This document shows positions 7,601 to 53,246 of a stretch of 64,000 nucleotides of DNA, piece by piece. Position 1 is the first letter of the stretch, and each line of letters opens with the position of its first letter. The position numbers and the translations under genes were made by a program. The DNA lies in assembly GCF_001194135.2 (NCBI RefSeq), contig NC_068985.1:31439547-31503546 (forward strand), written 5' to 3'. A model generated the notes under the pieces. That model saw nothing but the letters and a program-made list of their open reading frames with translations. It searched no databases and was not told the DNA's origin. The DNA is from Octopus bimaculoides. Taxonomy: Eukaryota.

Positions 7601-7900
7601 TAATTCCATTGTTGAAAAAAGAAAGACCTCTTTGTGCGGGAGAGAACTTATCCAAACTCTTGAACTTATCTGTAAGAACGACCGTGCGAACCCAAAAGGA
7701 GAAATGGTGACGAATGGAAAACAGGGCTCCTTTCTTAAACACGTCACACGGTCGAACACAAAATATATCAGATGATATAAATATGTTATACTTCGATAAC
7801 ATAGGGAACTAAGAAATGCCAGTAAGATACAAGATAGGACACAACCGATAAAGATGAATAACAGTAAGATTTATTTTAGCATTAAATTGTATGTCTGTGT

Positions 7901-8272
7901 GTGAGTGAATGCGACATAATGAAACACAATAAAAGACAGGCCGTCATGTAAAGAAAAAGTGTGTAAGTAATACATGTATGTGGGTACGAGAGATACACAG
8001 TATTGAAATAGAGTCAGTAACACGTATAAGGATTTAATATACCAGTTCTTAGAGTACACAGTGGTAAGTGTCTGTATATACNNNNNNNNNNGTGAGTGAA
8101 TGCGACATAATGAAACACAATAAAAGACAGGCCGTCATGTAAAGAAAAAGTGTGTAAGTAATACATGTATGTGGGTACGAGAGATACACAGTATTGAAAT
8201 AGAGTCAGTAACACGTATAAGGATTTAATATACCAGTTCTTAGAGTACACAGTGGTAAGTGTCTGTATATAC
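7901..8272. repeat. Identical 181 bp direct duplication flanking a 10-N gap (probable assembly artefact)
   Basis: 7901-8081 is identical to 8092-8272, separated only by N10. Confidence 0.85.
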
Positions 8273-8381
8273 GAAGTTAAGGCGTGTGTGGCAGAGCGAT
8301 CACTAGTTGTGATGTTAGGGCTTCTATGCCAAGCCGGGCTGGATACAGATGTTCTTCGCAGGCTAGGTTCTTGTCTATTAT

Positions 8382-8468
8382 TTATCGTGGTGAAGATGAA
8401 TCACACAAACAGAATCGAAGAGAAGTGCCGCAGTTAGCTGTTGGTAGCTTGTGTACGTGTAGAGTCAT
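8382..8468 (-). other. 28-codon small ORF/uORF MTLHVHKLPTANCGTSLRFCLCDSSSPR* in a putative leader
   Basis: First ATG downstream of the TATA box on the minus strand, in the context GTCAACATGA. TAA at 8384-8382. No family recognised. Confidence 0.35.
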
Positions 8469-8644
8469 GTTGACGCTGGCGGGGACGATGCTGGTAGTCG
8501 TAGTGTTGTGTTGCTGCTGGCGACGTCGGTGGCGATGCTTCTAGTTCGTAGTTGTACGATGGTGTTGATGTCGTCGCTGGAAACTGGTTGCTGCTGTGTT
8601 ATGCGTATGTGGTCAACGTCAGCCAGATCTAGGATCTGAGGCGC

Positions 8645-8815
8645 GACGACTTGGCGGGTATAATTTAGGCTATTTATAGTAAAATAGGGGCTCCAGGAAA
8701 GCATTAGAAAAACACTATCACGTGACCTTATTAGGGGCTGTGATTGGTCGATTTGCGTTCTGGCGGGAACGGTACGAGGCAGTTGCCGCTTCAAATAATA
8801 ATCAGTCACGTGATG
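8645..8815 (-). promoter_or_regulatory. Leftward-firing Pol II core promoter
   Basis: Minus-strand TATAAATA at 8678-8671 and CCAAT at 8747-8743. Two ATCACGTGAC E-boxes in opposite orientation (~8717-8726, 8805-8814). E2F-like TGGCGGG at ~8652 and ~8761. CpG-rich, with a CAA/CAC-rich leader downstream. Confidence 0.7.
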
Positions 8816-9282
8816 GATACAGTAGGCTGCTCTCTACTACGCCCGCACTTGATTATATTTATAACAGTGGGGAAGATGGTTTGTTTGTATATAATGGCGA
8901 TAGAGGTTAGTTTCACTACATATCTATAACGGTATGCGTGTAGTATACAAGAAACAGAAACTGACGAACGTTGGTTCGTTTTAATCACGAATCCTATAAC
9001 CTTATCGAGAGCGCCAGATGTGGGGACAATGAGGTACGTATTTTCACCGAAGAGTTATGAGACCAGGTCACATACATACCGCAACGCAGATGGCAAGATA
9101 GTACCTGCAGACTTCGCATTTGTTTGTTCGCCACTGTATCCATTGTTGTCTGCATTCTTTAGTTTCGTCTTATCTCCACGAAATCGTTTCGAACTCAAAT
9201 TTGTTCACTAGAAAAATTATAACATTAACTGCAAACCGTTTTCAAAGAGTTGCATTATCTGTGACTGTTTCAAAGGTGTTAC

Positions 9283-9920
9283 GAAAGTGAAAGTATATAC
9301 TTCGCCAGAAGCAGATGTTTATCAAATCAAAAAGTGCAAGTTTTTCATGAGTGAAAAGTGAAATTTATAATTTTTTAAAACACAAATGATAAACGGATCT
9401 AATGTCTTTAAATAATTGTTGAAATACAATTTCAACGTGAGTTTAAACTAGATTTTGAATAAAATACTCTGTGGATAGTAGTTTTTTAAGTTGGCACTTA
9501 GATGCTATTACATTCATACTCCCTATCTCATACGTTCAACAATATACGTAATTGATGACTGTCACAAAAGACCTTTCTTTGGAAAAAATTTGTCCGCAAT
9601 GACAAATTTCAGTGAGCTTCGTATGTTTATCACAAACAAGACAAAGGGAATGCGATCAAGAAAGCCAAAATTCTGCAGAAAAGTAATTTTGTCTCATGTA
9701 TTTGTTGTCAATCATTCACTTAATAGCTATACTTTGTTCACGTTAATTACGAATGTAATAACAAAATATTTGGTGTATCTAATTCAAATATTGAGAACAT
9801 CGTACTAGATGCTTTGTATTGATTAGCCAGAAGTCCTGTTCATTTCATTGCGTAGAAAAGTTCCATTTTATAAAAAAAACACTTTCACTTTTCGGCTGGA
9901 AAACACCTGCTTTCACTTTC
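9283..9920. promoter_or_regulatory. Cluster of four IRF-E/ISRE-type elements
   Basis: GAAAGTGAAAGT at 9283-9294 and GAAAAGTGAAA at 9353-9363. Reverse-complement GAAAAGTGAAAGT at 9881-9893 and GAAAGTGAAAGC at 9909-9920. Confidence 0.6.
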
Positions 9921-10797
9921 ATGACGGTTTAGAAACAAAGCGTCATAAGCATTTGCAATTTACGCATCACAATTTAATCCACGCAGTAAATAATTTGTCG
10001 TTATGCAAATTTCGACTTGTATGTATTTAATATGTGTGAAAAAAACCCAAAATAAATTGATGTGTTTCACAGACCAGTCCTTAACATAACTACCAGTTAC
10101 AAGATCTTACACCAACCACAACGAAGTTACGTCCCTTGCACCAGGAATGTAACATGGCTGTCTTAGGGATTATAAAAAATATTTAATAACGAATTATATT
10201 AATGATGTTCACAAATGTTTATTTATTTTATTTTACCGTAATATTTAGTGGCTTGGAATAATTTAATGTCGTTACTACATTACTAGCTATAATTAGATAA
10301 AATGGATACGTTATTCTTTAATCCCAGGCCAGCATTAATCGAGAAGACTACAAAGTACTGCCCATCCAGTGTTCCGTTTTTGAGGTAATATATGTCCAGG
10401 ACCACATTATCCATTATGTTTGGGTTCTTTTAAGACAGTAGGATATGACTTGAAGGAGGTTTAGCCTATATTTCGAGTCGATCTTCGTTAGATCGTAATT
10501 GTGAAATGTATAGTTGGTTAAAAAAATTCCCTTGATATAATTCATAAAATTTACTTTTACGAATAAAAATATATTCCATCAGGTTACTTTAAGTTGACTG
10601 TGTTCTATTTACGTTGCTGTAAAAAAACAACAGCAAATACAAAAAAAAAAACAGAAAAATACTTTTTCCCCCCGAAACAGATTTCTTTTGTCGTAATAGA
10701 TAATACGTGGTGACGTACCGCAATTGTGAAACCCACCCATACTAGAAAAAAACTTCATTGGTTGGCCACTTTAGAAGTAGGAAGGAAAACTTGTATT

Positions 10798-10832
10798 AGT
10801 TTCGGTTTTTTTATTCTTTTTCTTTCACTTAC
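10798..10832. promoter_or_regulatory. Proximal ISRE-like pair upstream of the ankyrin gene ATG
   Basis: AGTTTCGGTTTT (10798-10809) and TCTTTCACTTAC (10821-10832), about 200 bp before ATG 11027. Confidence 0.45.
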
Positions 10833-11026
10833 ACAATCCAGAAATATGGCAACGTATTTACGTTTATATGGTTAAGCAATGATTTTAACATGACATTTTA
10901 TATTAAATATGTCCCGAATTAATTTTAAAAACAGTGGAAGAAATGAAAGGTATGACTTATTCTTAATGAAAACGAATCCAGAATTGATTTGAATGTTAGA
11001 AATTGAACTACGATAAAACAAGTAAA

Positions 11027-11960
11027 ATGGATGTTGTGTCTCGAAATTATGAATTAAAATCGTTGAACAAGAGTTGTGGAAATGTAAACATAGACGAATC
11101 AGAAGAATCACATTCTATAGCTGTTGAAGTGTTGGCAAATCTTTTAAGCGGAACTTCATATCAAAATGAAAATGTTAAGCAGCAAATAGATTTACCAATG
11201 TATCCCACTCTAAAATTGAACGATGGATATGCAAAGGAAATGTCTTCGTTTGCTAATTTACCATCGGTAAGCAGTTATTTACAACCAACTGTTACTTCGA
11301 ATAATCCCGTGTTCAATACCAAATCTCAGTATCAACATCAGCCGCACATATCTGAAGCCAACAAAACTTGCCCTTTTGTACTTTCCACCAGTATTCCATT
11401 AACTACATCGAAGTCTGACTTAACTTTACCGACCGAGACCGATACTGATATGACAAACGATTCAAATTTGCCCTATCTGAATCAGGATAGTATGATGAAG
11501 ATCCACCCCGATAATGTTGATTCTCTACTGATTGTTAAACGTACCTCCAACAATTCAAAAGTTTATAGAGTGAAAAGAGTGAAAATAGATGAAATTCTAA
11601 ACATTCTGAACGAAAGTAGAACGAGGAAGTCTAGTATTTTGTCGAATGCGTCTTTAGATGATAGCTGCAGCACGAAGTCCGAACTTTTAACGAGAAAGCG
11701 GCTGATGGCCCAATTTTCAGCCAACACAAATCAATCGAGGGAGAATTCTTTGCTGTTTTTTCAGTTTCCAGGTTTTGGAATTAACAGTGACTCAATGGAT
11801 GACAGTCAACATTTAAAGAATACAATTGGATTGTTTTCCCAAAACAGTTTAGAAAACAGGACGAAAAGTTGTTTACCTCTGAAAAAAAGGAAAATAAAGT
11901 CGACTTTTCAGGCAACCAAACCTTTTAAACCACACAATACAAATGTCTCTATTGTTACAG
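11027..11960 (+). CDS. BCL3-like exon 1: low-complexity S/T/N-rich N-terminus (311 aa + 1 nt)
   Basis: Start AAAATGG inside ORF 11003-12025. Donor ACAG|GTAGTG is phase 1 and matches exon 2. Contains CLPLKKRKIK; no DSGxxS. Confidence 0.8.
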
Positions 11961-14900
11961 GTAGTGTACAAAAGTACTTTATTTACTTCATATTATTGGT
12001 CTTCGTGTATCTTAAGAAACGATAATAACATGTATGTCATTTTAATCTCAGAATAGTGACAACAGCTTCCACTTGGGCGAAGTGAACTTTCGAAACTGGT
12101 TATACATATGATCGGAAGAGGGCATTTATTTTGTGTTTCCTTTGTCTTCTGTGTGCCTAATGTCTGGCTCTCTTCTTTACTCACTCCATTGCTCCAGGTG
12201 TCTCGATCTTCCATCCGTAAATCATCTATATCAATCTTTAGCTTCCTGTCTTTTTAGCAGTATCTCCAGAAATAATTTGAGGTATGACCGTCCTTCGTCT
12301 AGTGAACATGTCTCAGCCAGTGCAAATGAGGAAAGCTGCTCGTTCTAATATCTGTGTTTATACGTGCTTCTCTCGTTTCCATGGCCCGATGTAAAAACTT
12401 ATCTTGTCAAAAGTTAAGTGTTTTTAAAACCCAAAAGTGCTTTTTTTTTGGCACTGTCAATGAAAGTAAAGTAGTGGACGGGAGAGAGAGAGAGAGAGAG
12501 ACGTAGGTATTATAAAACATCCAGTGTAATGTTATTGAAGTTGGATCCACCAAATATTGATAAACATTCCTAATTAACATGAGCAAAATATGGCTATCCA
12601 GCTATAAAACGTTACTAGAAAAGAGAACGATTACTAATTGGAGATTTAGAATTGGTTCTAGAAAGCATGTTCCGGTTGAAGTAGATGCTAGAGTAAGCGT
12701 TACACTTAGATGTACTGCAGCAGTATTTTACTCGAAGCAACAGGTGTACGCGCTCTCTAAGATGTCATACACAACCGCCAATCAAACTGGTTTTATCGAG
12801 TTGACATTAGATCCGGTTAAAATTTCTATTAAAAATATTCCTAAAACGTTCACTTTCTGAAAACTTTCGTTCTTTGACCTAGAAAATAATTCTGACGAAG
12901 TCAATACTTTCATTTTCATGATGACCTGGAAACGAAGTGATCAACCATCAGCATTTAGAAGCAGGTTTTTTGCACACCATAGTGTTTCCAGTTGAATTGA
13001 ATTCTTATTTATTCTTCTGGCCAGGAATATTGCTGCTCTATGTTCTCGACTTCTTTAAAATTCAGAAAAAAGAATTTTTCTGTACTTGTGTTTCTCATTT
13101 GACAAGGAATGTTGACGTCTGACCTTAATTTTATCTTATGTCTTGTTTACTAAACAGGTCGCCTGTTTTTGAGGATTAAGTGAAAGAGAAAACAACAAAC
13201 TGTTTAGGAGTAACAACCGAATGTTTGTTTCGAGCTAATTGGATCTAGATTTTCCCAACGCCTTAGCCTCGGCATCGCCTGTGCTAATGCTGAGAGCGTG
13301 CTGGCTTGCTTCAGTAGGTTCTGTTAAACTTTGTAGTGTGCGACCAGTTGCTGTGATTAAAAAAAAATCCTCATAAATGGGTTCAATACAGTTTTAATAG
13401 AAAGATTTGGAAGAATTAGATGAAAGTTCTCCAGTTATTTTCTTTCATGTAAATAATGGATCTATTTTAAAACGGGGGCCACATTTTTCATTNNNNNNNN
13501 NNNNNNNNNNNNNNNNNNNNNNNNNNNNNNNNNNNNNNNNNNNNNNNNNNNNNNNNNNNNNNNNNNNNNNNNNNNNNNNNNNNNNNNNNNNNNNNNNNNN
13601 NNNNNNNNNNNNNNNNNNNNNNNNNNNNNNNNNNNNNNNNNNNNNNNNNNNNNNNNNNNNNNNNNNNNNNNNNNNNNNNNNNNNNNNNNNNNNNNNNNNN
13701 NNNNNNNNNNNNNNNNNNNNNNNNNNNNNNNNNNNNNNNNNNNNNNNNNNNNNNNNNNNNNNNNNNNNNNNNNNNNNNNNNNNNNNNNNNNNNNNNNNNN
13801 NNNNNNNNNNNNNNNNNNNNNNNNNNNNNNNNNNTTTGTTTATGTAGTCGGCACTTAATGTATATCGGCTGAATGGACGTCAGTGATTGGTTGAAATTAC
13901 AGAAATACGACAACTTTAACATGGAATAATTTATGGATTTCTTTTTTTTTAAAGAAGACTAAGAGAAAAAGATGTTTTATATGACACATTCTACCAGTGT
14001 TCCAAGTTTCAAAGTGTTTCGTTAATGAAAAATGTGGCCCCCGTTTTAAAAAAGATCCTAAATAATTGTTTATGTTAATTTAAAAATTTTCCTGTAAAAT
14101 TTTATAAAATGACAATGTTCTAAAAAATGTACATGTTTATATGCTATATATGAAAATAAAATAGTAGAATTTTCACTGCATATTCTCAAGTTAGGTTATA
14201 TGAATATATCGTGATTAACTTAAGAATTTGAAAAAAAAAGTTTGACTTTGAAGACCCAACAAATCTACAGTAGCATGAGGAAAAGAATCTTTGAAGAGAC
14301 AGAGAGAGTGAGAGAAACAAAGTAAATCTTTTTCAAGTAAACAATTTTTGTAATATAACAAAGATCTTTGCTGTGACTTAATTTTGGAAATGAAAAAAAT
14401 ACTCAGGAAATATAGTCCTCATTCTTTAATATAGGTGATAAAGAAAAGTTTATCCTGATTTACAAATCTGAACAAAGTCAACTATTAACTGACAATGATG
14501 AAAAACTGAGAAAAGAGATCGAAATTGCTCTAAAACAGGATGAAGATGGTGACTTGTAAGTAAATTTTACTGATTTCATCTTTTTCAACTTTTAGTTGAT
14601 TATATCAACCTCAGTACTTTATCTTGTACTTATTGTATTAATCTCTATCAACTGGCTAAACTCACTTTGGTATAAAAGGACTTGGTCAGGCATCTGTTAC
14701 TGATACACATTGAAGAACTTACTTTCAAAACCAGATATATGCATCGGAATGACTTTTGAGTAAGTGTTTAAGACAACTTGAATAATCTGATTTTGATTGG
14801 AAGACTAAGATTTGCCTACTATCTATATGGCATCTATACCAGGTGACTGAAAAAAATTTCACGTGCACGAAGCTTGCAGATTGTGTTTTAAAGGTTATGA

Positions 14901-17900
14901 AATCGACCAAATATTTGAAAGTAAGCTCCTCATATACACATGGATACACACACATACATAACTAAAAAAATGATGCTGAAGATCTTTGTCTGGAACCATG
15001 GTACAGAAATAACAGCAGGAACTAAAATATATACATGTACAGTTAAGTGAAAACTACCATATTTGATGTGGTGAACCAGCAGTAATTTTTAATCAAAGGA
15101 AATCAAGTGAAATTATAACTTTAATGATAAAATTCATTCATAGGCGTGGCTGTGTGGTAAGTAGCTTGCTTACCAACCACATGGTTCCGGGTTCAGTCCC
15201 ACTGCGTAGCACCTTGGGCAAGTGTCTTCTACTATAGCCTCGGGCCGACCAAAGCCTTGTGAGTGGATTTGGTAGACGGAAACTGAAAGAAGCCCGTCGT
15301 ATATATGTATATATATATATGTATGTTTGTGTGTCTGTGTTTGTCCCCCCCCCCTCACCAACATCGCTTGACAACCGATGCTGGTGTGTTTATGTCCCCG
15401 TAACTTAGCCGGTTCGGCAAAGGAGATCGATAGAATAAGTACTGGGCTTACAAAGAATAAGTCCTGGGGTCGATTTGCTCGACTAAAGGCGGTGCTCCAG
15501 CATGGCCACAGTCAAATGACTGAAACAAGTAAAAGAGTAAGAGTATCAGTAATGGAAATTTGAAAGGATGCATGGGAGAGAACTCTGGAAAGGAGGGCAG
15601 GCTAGTGACTCTGATTTTTGGAAGCTATGAGATGATATATTAGACCAGTGTCAAACTTTTCGCACCAAATTGCAATATCGCCCACCTATCGGCCAAAAAA
15701 TGCTCCATCACCCACCTGTGTAAAAAAACCTCTAACACCTTCCTAACACTAAATCTCCTAGGAGAACCTCCCTCTGTATCATTTGACACACACACTATAC
15801 TGTAGACTCGTTGCCCAGTTAGTGCTGTTTGGACTAAATATGCAGTTGTTTACAAATCCCTTATTATGGGTTTAGTTTTGCCATTAGTGTGAATAAAATT
15901 CTAATATTAACTCTATATTATGCTGACGGATTAACTTTGGTAAACTTGCGCTTTCTTTTACACTGATTTTTATTTTCCACAAATGAAACATTGATCAGTA
16001 CTACCGATGCAAAAATAATTAATGATTGTATTATAAAGGAAAATAATACAGCTTTTTAATGAGAATCATGTGTCTGATGGAATGCAGCTAGTGCAGATAC
16101 ATTCAGTTTCAAACTTGTCAACTTTAGCTGCAAGTCTCTTTGTTGTGTCTATCCAGCCCAATTCTTTTATGGGAAAGTAAAGTTCCAACATGGCTAAAGC
16201 CAGATTCAACCAGGTATGCAATAGGGAAGGCAAGCAAAAATAATTTCAGATGTTTCCACAGATTGGGGTAGGAATTCAATATACTTTGATGGTACCACAA
16301 ACCTTTGCCATTACGGTGATATCGCATTGTGGCATTGTTGTCATTTTGTAATTCTATCAATTCTTCCTGAACGTCGTCCTTGCCAGTGGCACGTAAAAGC
16401 ACCCACTACACTCTTGGAGTGGTTGGCGTTAGGAAGGGCATCTAGCTGTAGAAACACTGTCAGATCAGATTGGAGCCTAGTGCAGCCATCTGGTCCGCCA
16501 GTCCTCAATCAAATCGTCCAAACCATGCTAGCATGGAAGGCGGACATTAAATGATGATGATGATATTAGTCATGTGAAATTTATTGTTATTTATTATCAT
16601 GCACCTAAAATGCAATAACACATTTATAATGATCTCAAATTAGAAAATTTTTTGAACTGTAGTTGTGTAACTACCTCTATACATACAAAGCAGTGTATGT
16701 AGTGAGAAAATAGAGATGGAAGTCTATACTGCTATGACAACAAGGTTGTAAAATTAAAAATCAATGTCACTGATAACTTGTACCTATTTTATAAATTTTT
16801 TGTGCTATTTAGATACACAATATTGTTTAATTAACAGAATCTATTTAGAACAAACTAATCTGTATCCATTATCAGTTTGCATATCTCAAGTTAAATCACA
16901 GTAGTTTCATTTTTATTCAATAATTTGCTAGCACATTTCCCCATTATACATGCTTAGTTTTGGACTATGAAATCCTGGAAAAAATATCTTTTGTGTATAA
17001 TACATTAGTTACTGTTACACTTAACCATTGCAATATTCTAGATATACTAATAATTATTTTAATTCTTTATTTATTTTATATTTAATCAGAATTTTCTGAA
17101 ATGGAGTGTTTATTCAGATTTATTATAATTGCTTTCTAAAGCACATTGAAAAGTTTGCACACTGTAAGGAAAACAAAAAACAAATTCAAAAATGACCTTG
17201 GTTAAAAGTGACCTTTTAATTTAACTGGCAAATGTGGGATTACTACTGTCAACTTTCAGTAAGAGCAGAAGGATCTAAAAGACAATGCAGAATATAAACA
17301 CTTTGATTATCAAATTTTTGATTAAATTCATAAGAATGTATTAGATTGAAATAGATATCTATCAATTGACTATACATACAGTCATGTCTCCCTCTCACGT
17401 ACACATAATTCCATCGTCTATCAAACTCCCCTACAACCCATCTTCCTTACACCCCAACCACCCACTGCAGGCCTCTCCTCTCTCCCTCATCTACCTATCT
17501 GGACTCTCTCCACGCCCTCACATATCTACTGATTATGTATGAAACTAAAGGTCTATTTTTTTGTAATGAGTGAAATTATTTCTAAATGAAATATTTTAGT
17601 TATTTTAATTTTTTGATTTAAATAATATACTGAGCAAATAAAATATCCCCCACTTCCAAAGTTTGAAGCTGATAAAAATGGTAGCTAATACATTCAGTTC
17701 AGTGTAAATGAAGTATTGACTGGAACACTATAAATTTCTGGAGAATATAAGTGTGAAAATTACTTGATTATAAAAAAGACTAGAGATTTTATCTGAATTT
17801 TGTTTTAAAACTGAAGAATGAATTGAAGTGAAAATGGGTAGTGACAGTAAGATGTTAATGGCATGAAAATAAAATAAAATAGAGTTAAAAATAAATATTA

Positions 17901-20900
17901 GATTTTGAAATGCTTCCTTCTCTGTAGGCCTCTACATATAGCTGTTGCACACAAGAATCTAGCATTAATTGGATCTTTCTGCAAGCTGATTCAACAAGCG
18001 GGGAAAACTGTTGATCGCTTTAATAAAAAAAAGCTTGTAAGTATTTTTTCTTAAGTTTTTCTTTTTACCATAGTAACCACTTGTGTTTATAATTCAATAT
18101 AGAATACAAAATACAGATGACCATAGACTTGAGTCTTATCTTGTTGAATGATTGGCCTATATTGATATATTTGCAAAAAATTGTAGAGACTTTATATTAT
18201 TTTAGGGTTGTTTACAGATTTTCAATGTCTGTTCAGGATTAAATAATATTGAAGATCTGTTGATATATCATAAAGAGCATGTTAATTGCTGTATAGTAGG
18301 AAGATAATGAAAGGAGACCTGTAAAAGTTAAGGAATGGCTTGTTGGATAATGGCTCAATGTGAAAGTTAGTCAGAAGAAGAGTGATAGTTGTGAAATAAA
18401 ACATGAATGAGACTAATCTTAAAACTATGAGAAACAAAAGCAATGTCAGAAATGAAAAGAAAGTTTGCAAGACTGTCTAATTCTGATTAGTTCCTCATCT
18501 TGAATGAAATACATTTAAAATAATAAACTGTTTGATAAACTTTCAATAGTGAAACAAAGAACAAAATAGTATAAATGATGATGAATATTCATTGTAAAAT
18601 GATATATCATCCCTCTATAAACATTTTCTCTAATATGTTTNNNNNNNNNNTCCAACCCATGCTAGCATGGAAAGCGGACGTTAAACGATGATGATGATGA
18701 TGTTTCTAACAAAAATACATTTGTATAAAGGAATTTGTTTTTATTTTAATCCCAGTTAACAACTTAGTAGTAATCGTTGCCAGAGGATGTTTTGGTTTTA
18801 GCTTCTGGTTAATATCCATTGCTCTCATGATGCTCTACATATGGCTATGCTCTTGCAGAAGATTTCTCATTTTGTGTAGCTGCAAGCAACAGTGTTATCT
18901 ATCATAGTGATTTGGCATGGTTAACTGGACATTAAACCTGTTTTGGTGATGGCATTTTTGTCAACAGTACTTTTTGGCACTGCATACACAGAAATATACA
19001 TATACAGATAGAGAGAGGGACACAAATGACAGGTTTGTTATCAACTAGAATAAAAGCAAAATTTTCACAGAGCCAAAAGATTTCGAGGACAAAACATCTG
19101 ATGTCAAATAAATTAGTGTTGAATCAGTGATGCCAAATAGGTCTCACACCTCATCTACCATGAGCTGATAATGAGAGATGGCATTCCAGCAATTCAACCA
19201 TAACCAACTAATTGTCACTCTGCTGGTTATGATGAGGGTTCCAGCTGATCCGATGAATGGAACAGCCTGCTTGTAAAATTAGTATGCATCTGTGGCTGAG
19301 CACTCCACAGATATGTGTATACTTAATGTAGTTCTCAGGGAAATTTGGTGTGACAGGGCTAGCCCTTTGAAATACAGGTACTAAAGTGTCTTGCTCAAGG
19401 ATACAACGCATTGCTGGGAATTGAACTCACAGCTGTATGATCACAAGCTGAATACCCTAACCACTAAGCCATGCACCTTCACATAATCAACTACATACAT
19501 TAAAAATATACATATTCCCTAACAGATATCTTTGTTTTTTTCCTTGTGGATAATTCATATAATTTTTTATTTATTAATATTTTTCACTTAAATACTTCAT
19601 TAACAGACACCGCTGATGGGCACATCCCCTGCAGCAGATAGGGATATCCCATCATGAGATGTGTATTCTTTAAAATAATTTGTTTTCATTAATTTTTGGC
19701 AGACTCCTTTGCATTTGTGTGTGAAAATGAATTATAGTAAGGGTGTGAGGAAGTTAATAAAGATGGGTGCTGACATGAACTTGTCTGATGGCAATGGAAA
19801 TTCTGCTGTTCATTTAGCAGTTTCCTATTCACACTTTGAATGCTTTGATGTCATCCTAAAGACATGTTCTTCTATGGAAAATTGTAAACCAAATTTAGAT
19901 TCCCATAATTATGAAGGTAAGTGTTTCTGGATTAAATGCAATTTCATTTTCTGTTCTGTATGTTATATTTTATGAAAGATGTAAATTGTTTCATTGAGTT
20001 AGGTACTTTTATAAATCAGCTGCAATTTTATTATAAAAGAAATTAGTGCTTATGTTTTTATCTTCATAAAATTAAAAAAAAAAACACTCTAAATTCTGAT
20101 CTAAAAATTAAAACTGATATTATAAAGTAAAACTTTATAAAGTAAAAACTTTATAAAGTAAAACTTTGAAGGATAACAAATTTTAATGAAAGATAGGGCA
20201 CTAATTATTTTAAAGAACTAAAAAGCATTTAGCTATAAACCAATTGATTGAAAAAGTTGAATTCATTGCAGTGTTAAAAGAAAACAAATGTTTGTCATTT
20301 CTATATTAAAATTAAAATATGAGTTTATGTTTGTGCCTTTAACCAAATTTGATAGATACCAAAATTCATTTCACAAGCAATAAAATCTCATGTTTTTGTT
20401 TTGTTTCATTATTGTTGTTCAAAACTTTCTGGTGTCATTAAATTAAGCTCTGTTCTTAGGAGTATATTTCAAGGTTCATAATTATACATGTTTTTAAATG
20501 ATATATTAACTTAAATGGTTCTGATTGAAGGTTTGAGGCCAATGATTTTAAAGCTGATTTTTCTTCCTATTTGTAACCATGTGCAAGTAGTATGTAAGTT
20601 GAATGTAACTGATATAAATAAAGAAATACTATTAAACACTGCAAAGTGGACAGTGGATTGTCAGAATCATTAGAGCGCTGGACAAAATACTTAATGGTTC
20701 TGGCCCTTTATGTTCTGAGTTCAAATCCCACTGAGATCAGTTTTGCCTTTTACCCCTCCAGGGTTGATAAAACATAGTATCAGTCAAGAACTGCAATCAA
20801 CTTAAATGACCACCAAATTTCTATCCTTGTGCCTAGGTCATTGGTTAATTAGATGATGATTAACCACAGGCTGATATTAAGAGAAAATAAAGAAGAGCAC

Positions 20901-23900
20901 TGATATAATTACGACTCAAGAAATTTTGGTAATCCAAGTTTGAGGAGATTTATACTTAACCATTGCAATATTCTAGATATACTAATAATTATTTTAATTC
21001 TTTATTTATTTTATATTTATTCAGAATTTAGTTTGTTGTAGTTAAAAAAAAAATCTAGAATATTGAAAAGCTCACACAATAGTGTTTTAGCGGAATTAAT
21101 GTTTGGAAAAAATTTAGATCTATTCAAAAGTTTGTTGTGAGAAAATAAAGATTTTGTAAATCTTTTTTTGCCCTGGATATCACTCAGTTTCCTGTAGGAT
21201 TTATCTTCAGACAAATTGCTTTGTGTAATTCTTAAAAGAACAAAGTGTTTATTGAAAGTAATTGCACTGTACTTGACAGATGGCTTGATTTCTNNNNNNN
21301 NNNNNNNNNNNNNNNNNNNNNNNNNNNNNNNNNNNNNNNNNNNNNNNNNNNNNNNNNNNNNNNNNNNNNNNNNNNNNNNNNNNNNNNNNNNNNNNNNNNN
21401 NNNNNNNNNNNNNNNNNNNNNNNNNNNNNNNNNNNNNNNNNNNNNNNNNNNNNNNNNNNNNNNNNNNNNNNNNNNNNNNNNNNNNNNNNNNNNNNNNNNN
21501 NNNNNNNNNNNNNNNNNNNNNNNNNNNNNNNNNNNNNNNNNNNNNNNNNNNNNNNNNNNNNNNNNNNNNNNNNNNNNNNNNNNNNNNNNNNNNNNNNNNN
21601 NNNNNNNNNNNNNNNNNNNNNNNNNNNNNNNNNNNNNNNNNNNNNNNNNNNNNNNNNNNNNNNNNNNNNNNNNNNNNNNNNNNNNNNNNNNNNNNNNNNN
21701 NNNNNNNNNNNNNNNNNNNNNNNNNNNNNNNNNNNNNNNNNNNNNNNNNNNNNNNNNNNNNNNNNNNNNNNNNNNNNNNNNNNNNNNNNNNNNNNNNNNN
21801 NNNNNNNNNNNACCTTAAATGCAATATGAAGAGCAATCTTCAGCTGCACGAAAAAATGTAGAAAAAAGACATATTACAAATGTGGCAACATATTAAAACC
21901 AAGTGGGAGAGAGCAGAGGAAGAATATATAAGTCCATCTTGACATAGCAGGGTCTATAGGTATATATATATATGTAGTTCAATACAGTTTGATTTGGATT
22001 CCGTGCTACTTCAAGCTTCGAAGCCTCTAACAGAGTATACATACATACACACATCCATACACTCACATATTGCACATGTACACGTGCACACAAGCTCATA
22101 TACCCACATGCCCCATTGACCCTACACCTGAATGCACTGTTGCCACCAGTTTTCTGTCCAACCACATGGCCACGAAACTCCTTTTCCTCATGTAGCTGCT
22201 GTCAATTTCTTAGCAATACTGTGACATCATGTAACCTTCCTTGACCAATTGCAGCCCATCTACTGGTAGCCATCTTGAACTTCCTGTACCTCCCCATTCA
22301 TTCGGATTTCCACCGGTTGCAGGAGCGGCTCTGTTAGGGGCTTTGAAACTTGAAGTAGTACAGACTCCAAATTAAACTGTTTTGAACAATACATGTAACT
22401 CCAAATAAATGTGTTGAGTGCCTTTGTTTGTCCACTCATAGAAAAACATATATATATCTGTATATGTGTGTCTGTTTGTCTTTCTTGCCCACCATTTAAC
22501 AACCAGTGTTGATGTGTTTGTGTCCCCATAACTTAGCGGTTCAGCAAAAAGGAAAAAAAAAAAAGAACAGGGGTTGATTCATTTGGCTAAAAAAATTCAA
22601 GTTGGTGCCCCAGCATGATCTCTGTCTAATGACTGAAACAAGTAAAAGATAAAATATAGCATCCAAAGTTATAAAACCTTATACTTTACTACTGAGCCAT
22701 TACCTAAATACTTTTGGGGTTTAAATCTAAAGCAATCTATATAAAATATATTCATTTAGTGTTATTGCAGTAGTATGGGAACCTGAATATATAGAATCAT
22801 CTTTATCTCTCTCTTTCCCTCCCTCTCTCTTCATCAATTCCATTATTCTGTCTCTTTCTCTTCCCACCTTTCTCTCCATTCACCATTTTCAACATCAATG
22901 CAACTGCTGATACCTTTGTCACCACCTTTGCCATAACTATCTCCTGTTTACTTCTTACTCTATTTGAGTCATTTCCCTTCCTTATACAAAAGGTAAGTAA
23001 TATACTATTGTAGTAATATATATAAATATATTTAAGAGAATTTACATTTAATCAAAATACTAAACAAGGTTTCCAGCTAATAATGTAATGTTAGTTATGC
23101 ATTATAAAGTTATCAGATGACACAGAAATGTTTTTTTTTTTAACTTTAAAAATTTTATTTTTGGCAATACACACTGTGTTTATTATCTATTTTTAACAAT
23201 TTTTATTTTATATATCAACCTCACTAATTTAAAAAAATTATATACAGGTTTAACACCCCTGCATACATCTGTCCAAAAGCAGAACATTGAAATGGCCAGG
23301 AAACTTTTAAAAGCTGGGGCTGATCCAGATAGTAAGGTAATCTAAAATGCTTTTCCTTTTCTTTTGTGAATTTTTTGAATTTCCATAACTTTATGCCATT
23401 ATCTATTATAAATTTTAATCTTAATTATTAATTTGAAATGGTTTCTTACTTATTCCTTTCTTGTTTTGATTTTCAAGTATTTTATAATTAGAATCTTATT
23501 CTGACAATAACTTCTGTCTGCGAAGCAGAAATACTGTTTTCAGCTCCGTTGATTGTTTTTAGTAATGTTTAACTAAAGTTACATGCATTATTTGGCAAAT
23601 TTTTAACTTATAATCAACAAGTAGGTTTATTCTGCTTCTATTCAAACTTGACATTGTAAAATAAGCTTTAATTTGTATAGCATTTAGGTTGTACTTGTTA
23701 AAATATTTTTCAAGGATATCAAACCTCTATTTAACATTTTAGTTAAAGCTTGTGGCCTAGTGGTTTTGATTTTGGTCATTAAATTATGGATTTGATCATA
23801 TGCTGAAATATATACTGGGTTGATATGATTGACTACATCCCTTCAACATGTCACCCCAACATCGCTGCAACCCAATGACTTCATTAACTTATTTGAAAGG

Positions 23901-26900
23901 GTCCTCCCCTCAGCTGATCAGATCATTTGAATACAAGCCTGTCAAGTGAAAGTTTGTATTATGTTAGCATTGCTGTACTGTGTTTCTATTAGCTGCAAGG
24001 CATAGCATCAATACAGAATTCAGTTTTCTTATTTTGTATCTTTTACTTGTTTCAGTCATTGGACTGCTTCCATGCTGGTGCATTGCTTTGCTTTGAAGGA
24101 TTTAGCCAAACAAATTGACCCCAGTACTTATTCTTTTAAGTCCGGTACTTATTCTACTGGTGACTTTTATGAAACTGCTAAGTTATGATAATGTAAACAA
24201 ATCAGCATTCATCAAGTGTTTGAGTGGTGGTGGTGGTGGACACACGGACACACACACTCTCTCTCTCTCTCTCTCTCCCTCTCTCTTTAAAAGTTAAAAG
24301 CTTCAATGTACTTTGCTTACTTTCTAGGATGTGTCTAGGAAGCAATTTCATTGTTTAATTAATTTTGCTTCTTTTTCTTCCTTTCTTCTTTTTCTAAAAT
24401 AAAAAGGATTACAAGAGTGGCCGGACACCTTTATTCTTTGCTGTTGAAAACCAAAATCAAGACATTATAAAGTTATTGCTAGAGAATAAAGCTTCCATTG
24501 ACATCCAAAATTTTGCTGGTCATACTCCTTTTCTTGTTGCTAATGGTCGTAAATACCAAGAAATTTGTAAGTTATTAGTTGATCAGGGAGCAGATGCTCA
24601 TGGAATGGTATTTGATGATTTAGCCTGCAACTACAAGGTATGTTACTTTAATATCTTTTGAACTACAATAATTTTTATTTTGAATTTATTATTATTTTCC
24701 TACTGCTTTTTTTATATGTATCTATTTCTTGTAGCATTTTGCCACAAAATTCATTAAGATTGTTATTATGGTAACTTAATCAATTAATTTCAAAACTGGT
24801 AGAGCTTCCTAAAACTAATCATTCTTGCTACCTGTTACTTCTGCTAGATTAAATTTATCTATTTTTGTTAGAATCAATTGAGATTCTGTGAGTTTGTTCA
24901 TTTTTCATCTAAGTCACACTTGAATATTGTTAATATTTAAAGATAAATGTTGCTTAATACACATCCTGATTTATAAACAATAACAGAAAAAGATGTCTTG
25001 TATAAACAAATAAAAAATGCCTTATATAGACAAAGACCGAGGTATCTTATGTGTGAGATAAAGTGACAATATTAGTTTTTTATGCTATTGTTTGGAAGTA
25101 GTGTTTGTGTAACTTATAGTATATAAATTTAATGAATATTAAGAAATAAAGAATGCATGATAAAGAATATCAGCATATAGAATAATCACGAGTAGATTAT
25201 TGACATTATATCAAGAAATATCTATGTCTATAATGTAATTATAATTTTATTACTTTTGAAATTTGCTGTTCATTTATTCAAATTTTTTTTTCACTGTGTA
25301 ATAATATTTTCTATTTATTTTCTATACTTATGTTTAAAATGATTTCATTTTAGAACAACTGAAAGAATAATTTTTCCAAATTAATTATTTCAGACATCAA
25401 ATGTAAAGTATCAGTTGAAAAATAAATTAGTCGCCAACCAGTCTAGTTGAAATCATAACTGAAAATTTTATGGCTGTCTTGAGAATGGTTCTTTCAAGGA
25501 AAATTTGGGAAGTTATTGGACCCAGCTTGAAATTTTGGTTAGTGCTTCCTCACCGTTTTCTGAAACAAGCACTGAAGATATGCAGAAGGTTTACAATTTT
25601 TGTTATTGTTTTACTGTTTTAAATAATTAATATCAGTGTTTCATCATGTCATATCTTTGGCATTAGATGGGATAATTTAGATTAAAAAAATTGGTAAAAT
25701 ATTGCCAAAAATGATTGTAAAGCAGAAACAGAAAATAGAAAATCTGGTTGGAAGTAGGTGAATGAAATCATATGTAAGAGCTTTGGGTTTCATAGAGGAG
25801 ATAATACAGATTTGTCATGAATGGAAACCTGTTGCATTGTAGACCTCTCTCTGCAGTCATAGAAAATCAGATGTTAAATCAATAAAGATGACACACTATG
25901 CTTTATCATGTAGTGGCTAATCGTGATTTAGCATCCAGTAGATGTTTGTTTTCTATACCAGATTGTTTCTCTCCAAAGAGTTGTAGCTTCCTTTTTGTCT
26001 TAGACATTGCTACAGTTATTGATGTTATACATTTTATTGAATGTAGCATTGGTGACAGACATTGAGTAAAGTAAGGGATATCTCTAAAGTGCCTATAAAC
26101 TTTAGGGACTGCAACCTTTATATTTGGTATTCTATTATCAGATGTGTCTTAAGATTGAATGAATTGTTCAGCATTTGAGGTGTTGTCTATGCCTCTTCAA
26201 AGCAGAAATATACTACTAAGAAACAAATCTCATAGATATCAATCCTTTCATAGGTTTGTGTCATCGTGTTTTTTTAAAGAACTTTTTATGTAAGTAATAC
26301 TTTTTAATTGATGGAAGTCATTCTTCACATATTATGACCATATCTTTTATCTTCTACTTGTTTCAGTCATTAGACTGTGGCTATGCTGGGCCACATCACC
26401 TTGAAGAAATTTTAGTCGAACGAATCAACACCAGTACCTTTTTTATTTTTTAAACTTGGTACTAATTCTATTGGTCTCTTTTGCCTAACAGCTAAGTTAT
26501 GGGGAGGTAAAGACACCAACACCAGTTATCAAGTGGTGGTGGAGGACAAACACAGGCTTAAAGATAGATAGATAAATACAGTTAGGCTTGATACATATAC
26601 ATGGAGCACAAAATAACAGAGTATAAAATAAAGAAAATATATATATATATAAATTATGTAATGTCTTGTCTTGACAGTTGTTTCAGGGGGTCTAGAGTTA
26701 TGTAATAGCTATCATTCACTAGCGGTATGTGCATAATGTTATAGATATGCAACCAAAGACAAGTCCAGATGAGGTTATTGCAGTAAGTCTGGCTTCCCTT
26801 TTCAAGGGAAAACTGGAATCATCTGATAGTGCTTACAAATATAAAGGTCCAAAGGGAAGAGAGAGAGTAGATGGAAATAGCGAGATGGAGGAGGTACGTA

Positions 26901-50974: not shown

Positions 50975-53246
50975 CTAGCAGGAGTTCCCGGCGTTGCTCG
51001 GGGCTGAATTGCTTTAAAGTACTGTTAATGATTCTACTCAATTATGATTATTGAGGCAAAGATTGATATAAGTTAACACCCAACCAATCGATTTGCAACT
51101 GGATAGAAAGCTCTGCAAAGAGCATTGCAACACTCTAAGAAGGGGTAACAATAGAATGTGAGGTGGCCCTGAAAAGGCTGTGTTATCATTCTCACAATTG
51201 TAACAATTTGGTAGGTAGTCCTGGAAGGGTGTGTAAAACGTTCGCAGATGAATACGGCATGTTCCTTTTCCACCAACGGCAGCGGACGTGCTGCTACAAA
51301 ACTTCATGCTCTGTGAAAACAGAACAGATGCCCTATGGAGGAAAGAGGGGGGATTAATCATACGGGTAAGTTTGAAAGCATTCAACAATAGCACCTACTC
51401 ACCATATATCAGACTGGCAAGAGTGTAGTGGTGCTGAATAGATGAATCACAACACCTCTGTCATGGAGATGTTGTGTAAAATGACCTGTTACTTTCGAAT
51501 ATTTTGTATTTGATGTAAAATGTAATGGTGTAAAATATAATGGTGAGTGAGGATGTATGTATTTAGTTTTATCGACTTTTGAAGTTTTGTTATTTGATGT
51601 AAATTGTAATGGAGTGTAAGAGATAGTTACTTCATGTAATTATTTTTATCCATTTGTTTCATTGATTGCCGTTATGATTACATTTGTTGTATAAAATGAT
51701 ATGTTGCTTGGTTTTCAAATTGTATGTTGTGATCCTGTTGCCGCTGATGTGAACTGTAATGTTGAGAGAGGAGATGGAAGTGGGGAGATGTTTCATGTAT
51801 GTGGGATGTAGAAGATGAGGCTGGTATGTTGACAAAGGGAGGGAAATAGAGCTGAGCGGAAGCCAGGTGTTGGTGAAGTGTGAAGTAATTGCAGGGAACC
51901 ACCTAAAAATGTAAATGTTGTCATAAAAGCATTGTTGACTGTTTGAGAATCGTATGGAAGTGAAATAGTAATGTGTCCGTGTTCCTCCGATGCCTGCTGA
52001 ATGGGGGTTGGTGAGGAAGAACAGCTGATTTTTGAGCAGGGCCTGATTTTTAATGAAGCTTGTAACGCCGCAAGAATCAGCCTTTTTACAGCTGATGGTT
52101 GGGAGTGTCAAGTGCACTGCAATGAATATTAACCTACACCTACTTAGAAATTACTGACAAAAAGGCAAAAAATTTTTTAAAAATTAGAAAAAGTTATAAA
52201 ATTAGGAAGTGAAGTAATCCTATAAAACCTCCTTGTACACAATGTTTTTTTTGTTTTTCCTTGTGGAATGAATGCAAAAGCATCACTCTTGCTGCCCACA
52301 CACAAGCAGTCAACGGAAAGCTGACCATGAGAGAAACACGGCTCCCCCAAATGTATTCCCGCGACAGACAGCGTTTGCCCCTGTGCTTNNNNNNNNNNNN
52401 NNNNNNNNNNNNNNNNNNNNNNNNNNNNNNNNNNNNNNNNNNNNNNNNNNNNNNNNNNNNNNNNNNNNNNNNNNNNNNNNNNNNNNNNNNNNNNNNNNNN
52501 NNNNNNNNNNNNNNNNNNNNNNNNNNNNNNNNNNNNNNNNNNNNNNNNNNNNNNNNNNNNNNNNNNNNNNNNNNNNNNNNNNNNNNNNNNNNNNNNNNNN
52601 NNNNNNNNNNNTGTGGCGACTGGGGCGATTTCTCTTTTACGATGGCATTGATTGTCTGAAAGAAAGGGTGAAAGTACTGAGAAATTGTCTTGGAAAGTAT
52701 GCGTAAAATTGAAGGGGGAAAAGGTGACAAGAAACGGCAAACAAATAAATAAACTGACAGGCATTAGTATGTATGTGTGTATGTATATATATATATATAT
52801 ATATGGTAGTAAGTAAATGTGTTTTAAAAATGATTTTCAAGAAACTCACAGTTTGTAGGGAATAAATGTTTGACTGTCGATCGTATTTGGAAAAGACTGA
52901 CAGATATTTGTATGTATGGGTTTATTTGTACGTATGTATGTAGTTTCACTTTAATAGTTTCAGTATTAAAGTAAAACTATTAAAGTGAAACTGTCTGACA
53001 TTAGAATAGAGAGATGTTATTGTTTCACTTTTGACACGTAATACTGCAATAGTGGAGGAGATGTGATATTGCACTGGGCTCGCACTAGACAAGAAATTAA
53101 AAATTTTTTGGCCTAAAACACTACCTGGACGCTAAGTAAGGCATGTGTAAAATTTGAATGAAATTGGTTGTGTAGTTCTCAAGTTTTAGGGATTCACACA
53201 GACAGACTCACAGACACACATTCTCATCTGTATATGTATAGATAGA
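50975..53246 (-). mobile_element. Helitron with intact termini and RepHel helicase remnant
   Basis: Minus strand: host A|TCTATC 5' end (53246). The 3' end has hairpin CCCGAGCAACGCCGGG, then CTAG|T (50975). No target duplication. Confidence 0.88.
52230..52388 (-). pseudogene. Pif1-like helicase C-terminal motifs of Helitron RepHel
   Basis: AQGQTLSVAGIHLGEPCFSHGQLSVDCLCVGSK versus consensus KAQGQTL..G..L...CFSHGQLYVA.SRV. Confidence 0.85.

What the first reader, a model, noticed from the sequence alone, without database searches (positions are those of the whole stretch)
9283..10832. Homotypic IRF-element cluster upstream of an IkappaB-family gene
Four GAAA(A)GTGAAA sites occur in 640 bp as two close pairs in opposite orientation. 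An ISRE-like AGTTTCGGTTTT sits near the start and further partial sites lie in intron 1 (~12905, ~13178). By eye I found only about one other such site in the window (~61.8 kb). IRFs (and PRDM1/Blimp-1) bind this motif. Molluscs have IRFs but no recognisable interferon, so this suggests a direct IRF-to-nuclear-IkappaB link coupling an antiviral-type response to NF-kappaB modulation. The cluster could also control the divergent transcript.
Basis: partly seen in the sequence, partly recalled or inferred. Interest (0 to 1): 0.7.

Follow-up and report, generated by a model that had tools for sequence, protein, structure and literature searches.

The report
Repeat-borne IRF-site cluster upstream of octopus Bcl-3
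Four perfect IRF-type binding motifs really do sit upstream of an octopus Bcl-3-like IkappaB gene, but they are leftovers of a duplicated 0.7-kb repeat, and the only deeply conserved site is one ISRE-like element in the core promoter.

Summary
GAAA(A)GTGAAA occurs at 9283(+), 9353(+), 9883(-) and 9911(-). There is one more in the window, at 61818. No dinucleotide shuffle out of 1000 gives more than 2 such sites in 640 bp.

The gene downstream is a 7-exon, 584-aa Bcl-3-like nuclear IkappaB.

The four sites are not independent. They lie in the imperfect ~120-nt inverted arms of a ~0.7-kb module (9250-9958), and each arm once held three such motifs. A diverged, inverted second copy sits in intron 1 (12390-12950) and accounts for two of the three intronic "partial sites". 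So the cluster arose by duplication, either of a transposon-like repeat or locally.

The module is present in O. sinensis and O. vulgaris, but it evolves as fast as or faster than neighbouring non-coding DNA (87.7% identity against 88-94%). The sites are no better kept than random 12-mers. Nothing like the module is detectable in Argonauta.

The proximal ISRE-like element (10798-10809, AAANNGAAACT on the minus strand) is different. It lies in a conserved promoter block and is kept at the orthologous position in Argonauta, with only the NN bases changing.

Verdict: an IRF (or PRDM1) input to this gene is plausible, mainly through the proximal site. The distal cluster is a lineage-specific, repeat-derived candidate enhancer of unproven function. 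Interest is modest.

The parts
9283..9294 (+). Site 1, GAAAGTGAAAGT. 12/12 to the IRF-E consensus GAAA[GC][TC]GAAA[GC][TC]. Motif 'a' of the left arm.
   Evidence: Identical in O. sinensis and O. vulgaris.
9330..9341 (+). Decayed motif 'b' of the left arm, AAAAGTGCAAGT (10/12). It pairs with site 3 in the arm alignment.
9353..9364 (+). Site 2, GAAAAGTGAAAT. Motif 'c' of the left arm.
   Evidence: In O. sinensis and O. vulgaris it reads GAAAAATGAAAG.
9857..9869 (-). Decayed motif 'c' of the right arm, AAAATGGAACTTT. It is intact (AAAATGAAACTTT) in O. sinensis and O. vulgaris.
9881..9893 (-). Site 3, GAAAAGTGAAAGT. It contains AAGTGAAAGTG, which from memory is also an exact PRDM1-type core. Motif 'b' of the right arm.
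   Evidence: Identical in O. sinensis and O. vulgaris.
9909..9920 (-). Site 4, GAAAGTGAAAGC (12/12). Motif 'a' of the right arm.
   Evidence: 11/12 kept in O. sinensis, with a 3-bp indel beside it.
9250..9958 (+). Module A: a ~0.7-kb repeat unit with imperfect ~120-nt inverted terminal arms (about 9250-9366 and 9849-9958).
   Evidence: the repeat finder I1 and I2. Arm alignment score 46 against 18 +/- 3 in shuffles. The nhmmer profile's left end matches the reverse strand at 9943-9877, E 5e-5.
12390..12950 (-). Module B: a diverged, inverted paralogue of module A inside intron 1. It carries the 'partial' sites 12906-12917 (GAAAATGAAAGT, paralogue of site 1) and 12846-12857 (GAAAGTGAACGT, paralogue of site 2).
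   Evidence: blastn 9723-9787 vs 12597-12535, 80%, E 1e-8; and 9283-9406 vs 12917-12803, 67%, E 3e-4. Alignments. Present in O. sinensis and O. vulgaris; its end is present in L004.
13178..13191 (+). Intron-1 site AAGTGAAAGAGAAA, outside module B. In O. sinensis and O. vulgaris it reads AAGTGAAAGTGAAA.
8951..8962 (+). GAAACAGAAACT, a full match to GAAANNGAAACT, lying upstream of module A.
   Evidence: 12/12 kept in O. sinensis.
10798..10809 (-). Proximal ISRE-like element, AAAACCGAAACT on the minus strand (AGTTTCGGTTTT on the plus strand), about 220 bp before the ATG.
   Evidence: Only the NN positions differ among the window (CC), O. sinensis and O. vulgaris (AC), the Logan octopod (CT) and Argonauta (CA). 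It is the only AAANNGAAACT in the 35.7-kb Argonauta locus.
10715..10812 (+). Conserved proximal promoter block. It contains ATTGTGAAAC, an inverted CCAAT box (CATTGGTTGG), GGAAGGAAAAC and the ISRE-like element. The TSS is presumed to lie just downstream (inferred, not shown).
   Evidence: Nearly invariant in four Octopus-type sequences. Its 3' part (10748-10808) aligns to Argonauta with score 43 against 24 +/- 3 in shuffles. 93.1% identical to O. sinensis.
11027..25450 (+). Bcl-3-like nuclear IkappaB gene, coding part. Exons: 11027-11960, 14435-14555, 17928-18036, 19703-19916, 23248-23336, 24407-24637, 25394-25450. The product is 584 aa.
   Evidence: tblastn with O. sinensis, O. vulgaris and Argonauta orthologues. 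All junctions are AG/GT and the reading frame is open. Ank Pfam hits. Bcl-3 1K1A at 2e-39.

Best explanation
The four sites are the surviving copies of an IRF-E/PRDI-type motif (AAAGTGAAAG) that was multiplied by duplication.

Shown:
- A ~0.7-kb module (9250-9958) has imperfect inverted arms, and each arm originally carried three such motifs.
- The module lies 1.1-1.75 kb upstream of the ATG of a Bcl-3-like nuclear IkappaB gene.
- A second, inverted and more decayed copy lies in intron 1.
- A single ISRE-like element (AAANNGAAACT, 10798-10809) sits in the conserved core-promoter block. It is retained at the orthologous position from Octopus to Argonauta, and only its two degenerate bases vary.

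Inferred:
- An IRF-family factor binds the proximal element. This would give the gene an IRF-type (antiviral or dsRNA-responsive) input across octopods.
- In the Octopus lineage, the repeat-derived module added four to six high-affinity sites upstream, plus weaker ones in the intron. These may work as an added inducible enhancer.
- Whether the module came from a mobile element or from a local inverted duplication is undecided.
For: - Sites and enrichment.
- Duplication structure: inverted repeats I1 and I2. The arm alignment beats shuffles even with the IRF cores held fixed, with 18 of 1000 shuffles reaching it. Paralogy of modules A and B: blastn E 1e-8 and 3e-4, alignments. The nhmmer profile hits the reverse strand of the right arm, E 5e-5 in the window and 5e-6 in O. 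sinensis and O. vulgaris.
- Gene identity.
- Proximal element: conserved block in 4 Octopus-type sequences. It aligns to Argonauta 138 bp before its ATG, with score 43 against 24 +/- 3 in shuffles. Only the NN bases vary. It is the sole AAANNGAAACT in the 35.7-kb Argonauta locus. In Argonauta, 2 of the 5 AAANNGAAA[CG] matches lie within 1 kb of the 5' end.
- O. sinensis and O. vulgaris keep sites 1 and 3 exactly, keep site 4's GAAAGTGAAAG core, and keep an IRF-like form of site 2. They have an intact sixth motif.
- Mollusc IRFs can drive vertebrate ISRE and IFN-beta reporters, and are induced by poly(I:C) and virus (PMC5557890).
Against: - No binding, chromatin or expression data exist. The TSS is inferred only.
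- Module A is 87.7% identical to O. sinensis, which is no better than neighbouring non-coding DNA (88-94%). The four sites (46/49 bases kept) are not better conserved than random 12-mers of the module (P about 0.36).
- Between the two arms, motif columns are about 86% identical and aligned non-motif columns about 79% (hand count). This gives no sign of motif-specific retention.
- No module or cluster is seen in Argonauta.
- The proximal element cannot be separated statistically from conservation of the whole promoter block.
- The motif is also what PRDM1/Blimp-1 binds.
Confidence: 0.45

Rival explanations
1. The module is a neutral repeat remnant. It would be two old copies of a non-autonomous transposon-like or foldback-like repeat that happened to land on either side of exon 1. 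The AAAGTGAAAG motifs would be the element's own subterminal repeats (for example, former transposase-binding sites). On this reading they have no role in regulating the gene, and any IRF resemblance is incidental.
For: - Inverted arms with repeated subterminal motifs, and a second inverted copy.
- Arm-to-arm and copy-to-copy divergence are similar (about 67-80% identity), as expected for one old burst.
- The module evolves as fast as or faster than its flanks, and the sites are no better kept than random 12-mers.
- Motifs are visibly decaying: 9330, 9857, and module B.
- The module is absent from Argonauta.
Against: - No target-site duplication or clean termini could be defined (by eye).
- No third copy is found in about 130 kb of octopod sequence held here.
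- The motif is an exact match to the optimal IRF-E/PRDI consensus. It sits next to an immune gene whose core promoter has its own conserved ISRE-like site.
- A neutral origin does not exclude later use, as with mammalian TE-derived IFN-inducible enhancers (PMC10229128).
Confidence: 0.35
2. The sites are functional but are read by PRDM1/Blimp-1 or another GAAA-reading factor rather than an IRF. For example, they could serve as repressor sites that keep the gene off in some tissues.
For: Sites 1, 3 and 4 contain AGTGAAAG(T/C). From my own knowledge, this is the PRDM1 core, and in vertebrates it overlaps IRF1/2 sites. Site 3 is an exact AAGTGAAAGTG.
Against: - The deeply conserved proximal element is GAAACT-type (ISRE-like) and lacks the AGTGAAAG core.
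- No data exist on octopus PRDM1 specificity.
- The same lack of constraint applies as for the IRF reading.
Confidence: 0.12
3. The cluster mainly controls a divergent minus-strand transcript that starts just upstream of 9283.
For: - Sites 1 and 2 lie within about 150 bp of a minus-strand ATG at 9143 followed by a GT donor (by eye).
- 8918-9249 is 93.7% identical to O. sinensis, higher than module A.
Against: - No gene is called within 10 kb upstream in the O. sinensis or O. vulgaris records.
- The minus-strand ORFs are short and have no homologues.
- The promoter-like TATA/CCAAT stretch near 8690 lies in a 1.24-kb insertion absent from the other two species.
- In Argonauta the upstream neighbour is ANAPC13 on the same strand, and it has no counterpart here.
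Confidence: 0.05

Closest known systems
Vertebrate IRF-E / ISRE / PRDI-PRDIII elements (ISG promoters, IFN-beta enhancer)
   Same: - Sites 1 and 4 match GAAA[GC][TC]GAAA[GC][TC] at 12/12. Sites 2 and 3 are AAAAGTGAAA-type. The proximal element is AAANNGAAACT.
- There are multiple sites in both orientations within an enhancer-sized stretch, next to an immune-regulatory gene.
   Different: - The host is a mollusc with no canonical interferon.
- Binding and inducibility are untested.
- The sites arose by duplication of one repeat unit and show no detectable constraint.
- No adjacent kappaB/ATF enhanceosome-like arrangement was established.
Transposon-derived interferon-inducible enhancers of mammals (MER41, from my own knowledge; mouse B2 SINE, PMC10229128)
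   Same: A repeated sequence unit carries ready-made IRF/STAT-type motifs and places them next to an immune gene. It is lineage-specific, with at least two copies at the locus.
   Different: - Mobile-element status is unproven here: no TSD, no defined family, and unknown genome copy number.
- No evidence of enhancer activity.
Bcl-3 / IkappaB-zeta / IkappaBNS (atypical nuclear IkappaB proteins)
   Same: - The ankyrin domain aligns end to end with human Bcl-3 (1K1A, 2e-39).
- There is a basic KKRK stretch before the ankyrin domain and no DSGxxS degron.
- Orthologues are named Bcl-3 by NCBI.
   Different: - The 310-aa N-terminal exon has no recognisable domain and evolves fast (33% identity to Argonauta).
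- Partners (p50/p52-type Rel proteins) and nuclear location are not shown.
PRDM1/Blimp-1 binding sites
   Same: The AGTGAAAG(T/C) core is present in sites 1, 3 and 4.
   Different: The conserved proximal element lacks that core. No octopus PRDM1 data exist.

Membership tests
IRF-E / ISRE cis-element | Sequence match to GAAANNGAAA(C/G)(T/C) or the AANNGAAA tandem core | tested here: met
   Sites 1 and 4 score 12/12, site 3 scores 11/12, site 2 scores 10/12, and the proximal element scores 11/12.
IRF-E / ISRE cis-element | More sites than the background gives | tested here: met
   0 of 1000 shuffles reach 4 sites in 640 bp. 7 of the 16 strong matches lie in 8951-12906. However, the sites are duplicates of one another.
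IRF-E / ISRE cis-element | Conservation of the sites in orthologous promoters beyond the neutral level | tested here: inconclusive
   Distal cluster: 46/49 bases kept against O. sinensis, not above random 12-mers (P about 0.36), and absent in Argonauta. Proximal element: kept in all five sequences including Argonauta, with only NN varying.
IRF-E / ISRE cis-element | Bound by an IRF, and confers virus/dsRNA/IRF inducibility | not testable with these tools
   Only indirect evidence exists: oyster CgIRF2 and CgIRF8 activate mammalian ISRE and IFN-beta reporters (PMC5557890).
IkappaB family, Bcl-3-like | Central domain of about 6-7 ankyrin repeats most similar to IkappaB/Bcl-3 | tested here: met
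   Ank Pfam hits. Bcl-3 1K1A at 2e-39 over residues 2-210 of the chain is the best IkappaB-family structure, and p100 scores 1.5e-27. Longer ankyrins and designed repeat proteins score higher. NCBI names the orthologues Bcl-3.
IkappaB family, Bcl-3-like | Atypical/nuclear type: no IKK degron (DSGxxS), with a nuclear localisation signal | tested here: met
   No DSGxxS or D[ST]G in the 584-aa product. KKRK at residue 286, just before the ankyrin domain. Actual localisation is not shown.
IkappaB family, Bcl-3-like | Binds Rel/NF-kappaB dimers | not testable with these tools
Non-autonomous DNA transposon (MITE-like / foldback) | Terminal inverted repeats | tested here: met
   Imperfect ~120-nt arms. 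In aligned blocks they are about 80% identical (hand count), with several indels.
Non-autonomous DNA transposon (MITE-like / foldback) | Target-site duplication and sharp, shared termini | tested here: inconclusive
   No matching flanks were seen by eye around 9250/9958 or around module B. The A-B homology limits (about 9267 to 9957) do not coincide with the arm ends.
Non-autonomous DNA transposon (MITE-like / foldback) | Many dispersed copies in the genome | not testable with these tools
   Only two copies are seen, both at this locus. There are none elsewhere in the window or in L001-L004. No octopus genome could be searched by DNA.

The most novel reading that the evidence does not exclude
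A repeat, possibly a mobile element, that carries arrays of optimal IRF sites has been co-opted in the Octopus lineage as a virus- or dsRNA-inducible enhancer of a nuclear IkappaB gene. It would reinforce an older proximal ISRE. This would be an invertebrate counterpart of the transposon-derived interferon-inducible enhancers of mammals, in an animal without canonical interferon. It would also be a direct IRF-to-NF-kappaB-modulator wire.
Probability: 0.15. Interest if true: 0.6.

Novelty: new member of a known kind. Interest (0 to 1): 0.3.

Why it matters
Cis-regulatory logic of cephalopod immunity is almost unknown. If true, this finding would give a concrete, testable IRF target in a cephalopod. 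It would show that IRF input to an NF-kappaB modulator predates, or exists independently of, the interferon system. It would also offer a possible case of repeat-driven rewiring of innate immunity outside vertebrates. As it stands it is a motif-level prediction. The part with real comparative support is one proximal element, not the eye-catching distal cluster.

Tried and rejected
1. Fetching orthologous promoter DNA from more octopods. I searched the protein database with a chimera of spurious ORFs from 8994-10030. Nothing was found.

2. The Logan contigs of a species about 83% identical (L004, L005). They start at window position ~10094, just short of the cluster, and their first 100 bp do not align.

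3. A profile search for orthologues in other cephalopods. It gave two probable decapodiform orthologues (P0005, P0006). Both sit on ~2.5-kb contigs that the coding sequence nearly fills, so they probably carry no promoter. The remaining hits were generic ankyrin proteins.

4. A strict TIR/TSD reading of the module. No target-site duplication or clean ends were found.

5. A simple left/right arm equivalence of site 2 with site 3 (I2). The gapped alignment replaced it, pairing site 3 with the decayed motif at 9330 and site 2 with 9857-9869.

6. ANAPC13 synteny. It is the upstream neighbour in Argonauta, but it is not in the window or in the O. sinensis or O. vulgaris loci.

7. Rfam scan of the whole window. 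No RNA family was found.

8. The bacterial promoter/terminator scan is irrelevant to a eukaryote.

9. Literature searches for octopus IRF or Bcl-3 induction data. Nothing specific was found.

Full report
**1. The observation**

Reading 9000-11200 and pattern scans confirm the four sites:
- site 1: GAAAGTGAAAGT, 9283-9294 (+)
- site 2: GAAAAGTGAAAT, 9353-9364 (+)
- site 3: GAAAAGTGAAAGT, 9881-9893 (-)
- site 4: GAAAGTGAAAGC, 9909-9920 (-)

The only other strict match is at 61818 (-).

In 1000 dinucleotide-preserving shuffles the strict pattern averages 0.55 matches per window, against 5 observed. No shuffle has more than 2 within 640 bp. The tool's own test of GAAAGTGAAA with one mismatch gives 22 observed against 9.9 +/- 3.1.

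Scored against GAAA[GC][TC]GAAA[GC][TC], 16 positions in the window reach 11/12, and 7 of them lie between 8951 and 12906. Looser patterns are generally over-represented against shuffles across the whole window (for example GAAANNGAAA, 19 against 5.3). Shuffles therefore understate the real background. Even so, the strict cluster stands out in the real sequence.

**2. The gene**

A protein search with the large ORF at 11027 found orthologues in four sources:
- O. vulgaris (87% identity)
- an unnamed Logan octopod (77%)
- O. sinensis, named "B-cell lymphoma 3 protein" (84% over the half of the query it covers)
- Argonauta hians, named "B-cell lymphoma 3 protein-like" (33%)

Mapping them back gives seven coding exons with AG/GT junctions and a 584-aa product. 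The ankyrin part aligns end to end with human Bcl-3 (1K1A, 2e-39). That is the best IkappaB-family structure, and p100 follows at 1.5e-27. There is no DSGxxS degron, and KKRK lies just before the ankyrin domain.

The window is about 9-11% diverged in DNA from O. sinensis and O. vulgaris. It therefore comes from another Octopus species.

**3. What the cluster is**

The repeat finder showed that site 1 pairs with site 4, and site 2 with site 3, inside 28-nt inverted repeats that extend beyond the motif.

A gapped alignment of the left arm (9250-9400) against the reverse complement of the right arm (9850-9960) scores 46, against 18 +/- 3 for shuffles. With the IRF cores held fixed, only 18 of 1000 shuffles reach that score. 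That alignment shows three motif positions per arm:
- a: site 1 / site 4
- b: 9330 AAAAGTGCAAGT (decayed) / site 3
- c: site 2 / 9857-9869 AAAATGGAACTTT (decayed in the window, but AAAATGAAACTTT in O. sinensis and O. vulgaris)

Independently, blastn of 9200-10000 against the window found an inverted paralogue in intron 1. Region 9723-9787 matches 12597-12535 (80%, E 1e-8), and 9283-9406 matches 12917-12803 (67%, E 3e-4).

The intronic "partial sites" at 12906 and 12846 are the paralogues of sites 1 and 2. Both modules exist in O. sinensis and O. vulgaris. The end of module B is also present in the 83%-identity Logan species.

An nhmmer profile of the six copies finds no further copy in the window, in the two other Octopus loci or in the Argonauta locus. 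It does re-find the right arm on the reverse strand (E 5e-5 to 5e-6).

So the four sites descend from one motif-bearing unit by an inverted duplication, and the whole module was duplicated once more. Arm-to-arm and copy-to-copy identities are similar (roughly 67-80%). That fits one old burst of a repeat with inverted ends and subterminal repeats, but a local inverted duplication would fit too. I could not define target-site duplications or clean ends, and genome copy number could not be checked.

**4. Conservation**

In a three-way alignment of 8918-13470, identity to O. sinensis is as follows:

| Segment | Identity to O. sinensis |
|---|---|
| Whole region | 90.9% |
| Module A | 87.7% |
| Module B | 88.2% |
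| 8918-9249 | 93.7% |
| Promoter block | 93.1% |
| 5'UTR | 94.4% |
| First part of intron 1 | 93.4% |

- The four sites keep 46 of 49 bases. Random sets of four 12-mers from module A do as well about 36% of the time.
- Between the two arms, motif columns (about 86%) are not clearly better kept than other aligned columns (about 79%; hand count).
- In Argonauta, AAGTGAAA does not occur in the 10 kb upstream, and nothing aligns to the module.
- The distal cluster therefore has no comparative evidence of constraint. At this short distance the test is weak, so function is not excluded.

**5. The proximal element**

The stretch 10715-10812 is nearly invariant in the window, O. sinensis, O. vulgaris and the Logan species. 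Its 3' part aligns to Argonauta 138 bp before that species' ATG. The alignment scores 43, against 24 +/- 3 in shuffles of the query, or 29 +/- 3 against the full 10 kb on both strands.

On the minus strand the element reads:
- AAAA-CC-GAAACT (window)
- AAAA-AC-GAAACT (O. sinensis and O. vulgaris)
- AAAA-CT-GAAACT (Logan species)
- CAAA-CA-GAAACT (Argonauta)

Only the two degenerate positions of the ISRE core, plus the first base, change. AAANNGAAACT occurs exactly once in the whole 35.7-kb Argonauta locus, at this position. Of the 5 AAANNGAAA[CG] matches in that locus, 2 lie within 1 kb of the gene's 5' end. This is the best evidence for a selected IRF-type site. It cannot be separated from conservation of the block as a whole.

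**6. Mechanism**

Shown:
- the motifs, their duplication history, the gene identity and the proximal conservation.

From the literature:
- Oyster IRF2 and IRF8 are induced by poly(I:C) and OsHV-1 and activate human ISRE and IFN-beta reporters (PMC5557890).
- An oyster IFN-like protein and a cGAS/STING-TBK1-IRF axis have been described (PMC8218723).
- In mammals, repeats carrying IRF/STAT motifs act as IFN-inducible enhancers (PMC10229128).

Inferred:
- An IRF binds the proximal element and gives this Bcl-3-like gene an antiviral-type input in octopods.
- The repeat-derived module adds a strong homotypic array in Octopus.

Rivals:
- The module is a neutral repeat remnant (0.35).
- The sites are read by PRDM1/Blimp-1 (0.12).
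- The cluster controls a divergent transcript (0.05). This has no annotation support. The only promoter-like stretch on the minus strand lies in a 1.24-kb insertion private to the window species.

**7. Verdict**

Its "homotypic cluster" character comes from duplication. In kind, this is a new member of a known class: IRF-E/ISRE-type elements, possibly repeat-borne. Interest is modest at 0.3. It would rise to about 0.6 if the repeat proves to be a co-opted inducible enhancer.

Noticed in passing
window 52942-53032: A perfect 19-nt inverted repeat, AGTTTCACTTTAATAGTTT ... AAACTATTAAAGTGAAACT, with a 13-nt spacer. Each arm holds an ISRE-type AAAGTGAAACT. A third AAAAGTGAAAC lies at 53021 (-). This is the second-densest spot for the motif in the window. 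No gene is recognised nearby, and it is not related to modules A or B by nhmmer.
   Followed up: partly
window 7676-8917: A 1.24-kb stretch absent from O. sinensis and O. vulgaris, where the flanks are contiguous. It is G+C-richer than its surroundings. On the minus strand near 8690-8770 it has TATAAATAG, CCAAT and two CACGTG boxes. About 190 bp is duplicated on either side of the 10-N gap at 8082-8091, which is probably an assembly artefact.
   Followed up: partly
window 1976-3426 (+): Remnant of a pogo/Tigger-type transposase, split over three ORFs (HTH_Tnp_Tc5 1e-4; DDE_1 4.5e-23). Part of it is also present in O. sinensis and O. vulgaris.
   Followed up: partly
window 8951-8962 (+): GAAACAGAAACT, a full GAAANNGAAACT match, lies 33 bp inside the conserved DNA next to the private insertion. 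All 12 bases are kept in O. sinensis and O. vulgaris.
   Followed up: partly
L001 (O. sinensis) and L002 (O. vulgaris) gene models: Public models of this gene disagree. O. vulgaris splits it into a 320-aa 'hypothetical protein' (exon 1) and a separate 110-aa ankyrin gene. The O. sinensis model starts at an internal Met and lacks about 155 N-terminal residues. The window supports one 584-aa product.
   Followed up: partly
L004/L005 1-100 (Logan SRR11869391/SRR11869390): The first ~100 bp of these contigs do not align to the window upstream of ~10094. That species either has an insertion or rearrangement there, or the contig end is chimeric. This blocked the view of the cluster in the one species at intermediate distance.
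   Followed up: no
window 9303-9312 and 12885-12894: Next to site 1 and its intronic paralogue lies a shared TTCGCCAGAA / TTCGTCAGAA (TTC-N4-GAA, STAT6-type spacing). O. vulgaris keeps it, and O. sinensis has changed it to TTTGCCAGAA. It may be no more than part of the duplicated block.
   Followed up: no
P0005, P0006 (Logan contigs of ~2.5 kb): Two proteins of 727-729 aa, 46-47% identical to the Argonauta protein over about 60% of its length. They are probably decapodiform orthologues. The contigs are nearly filled by the coding sequence, so they look like transcripts, but they were not fetched.
   Followed up: no
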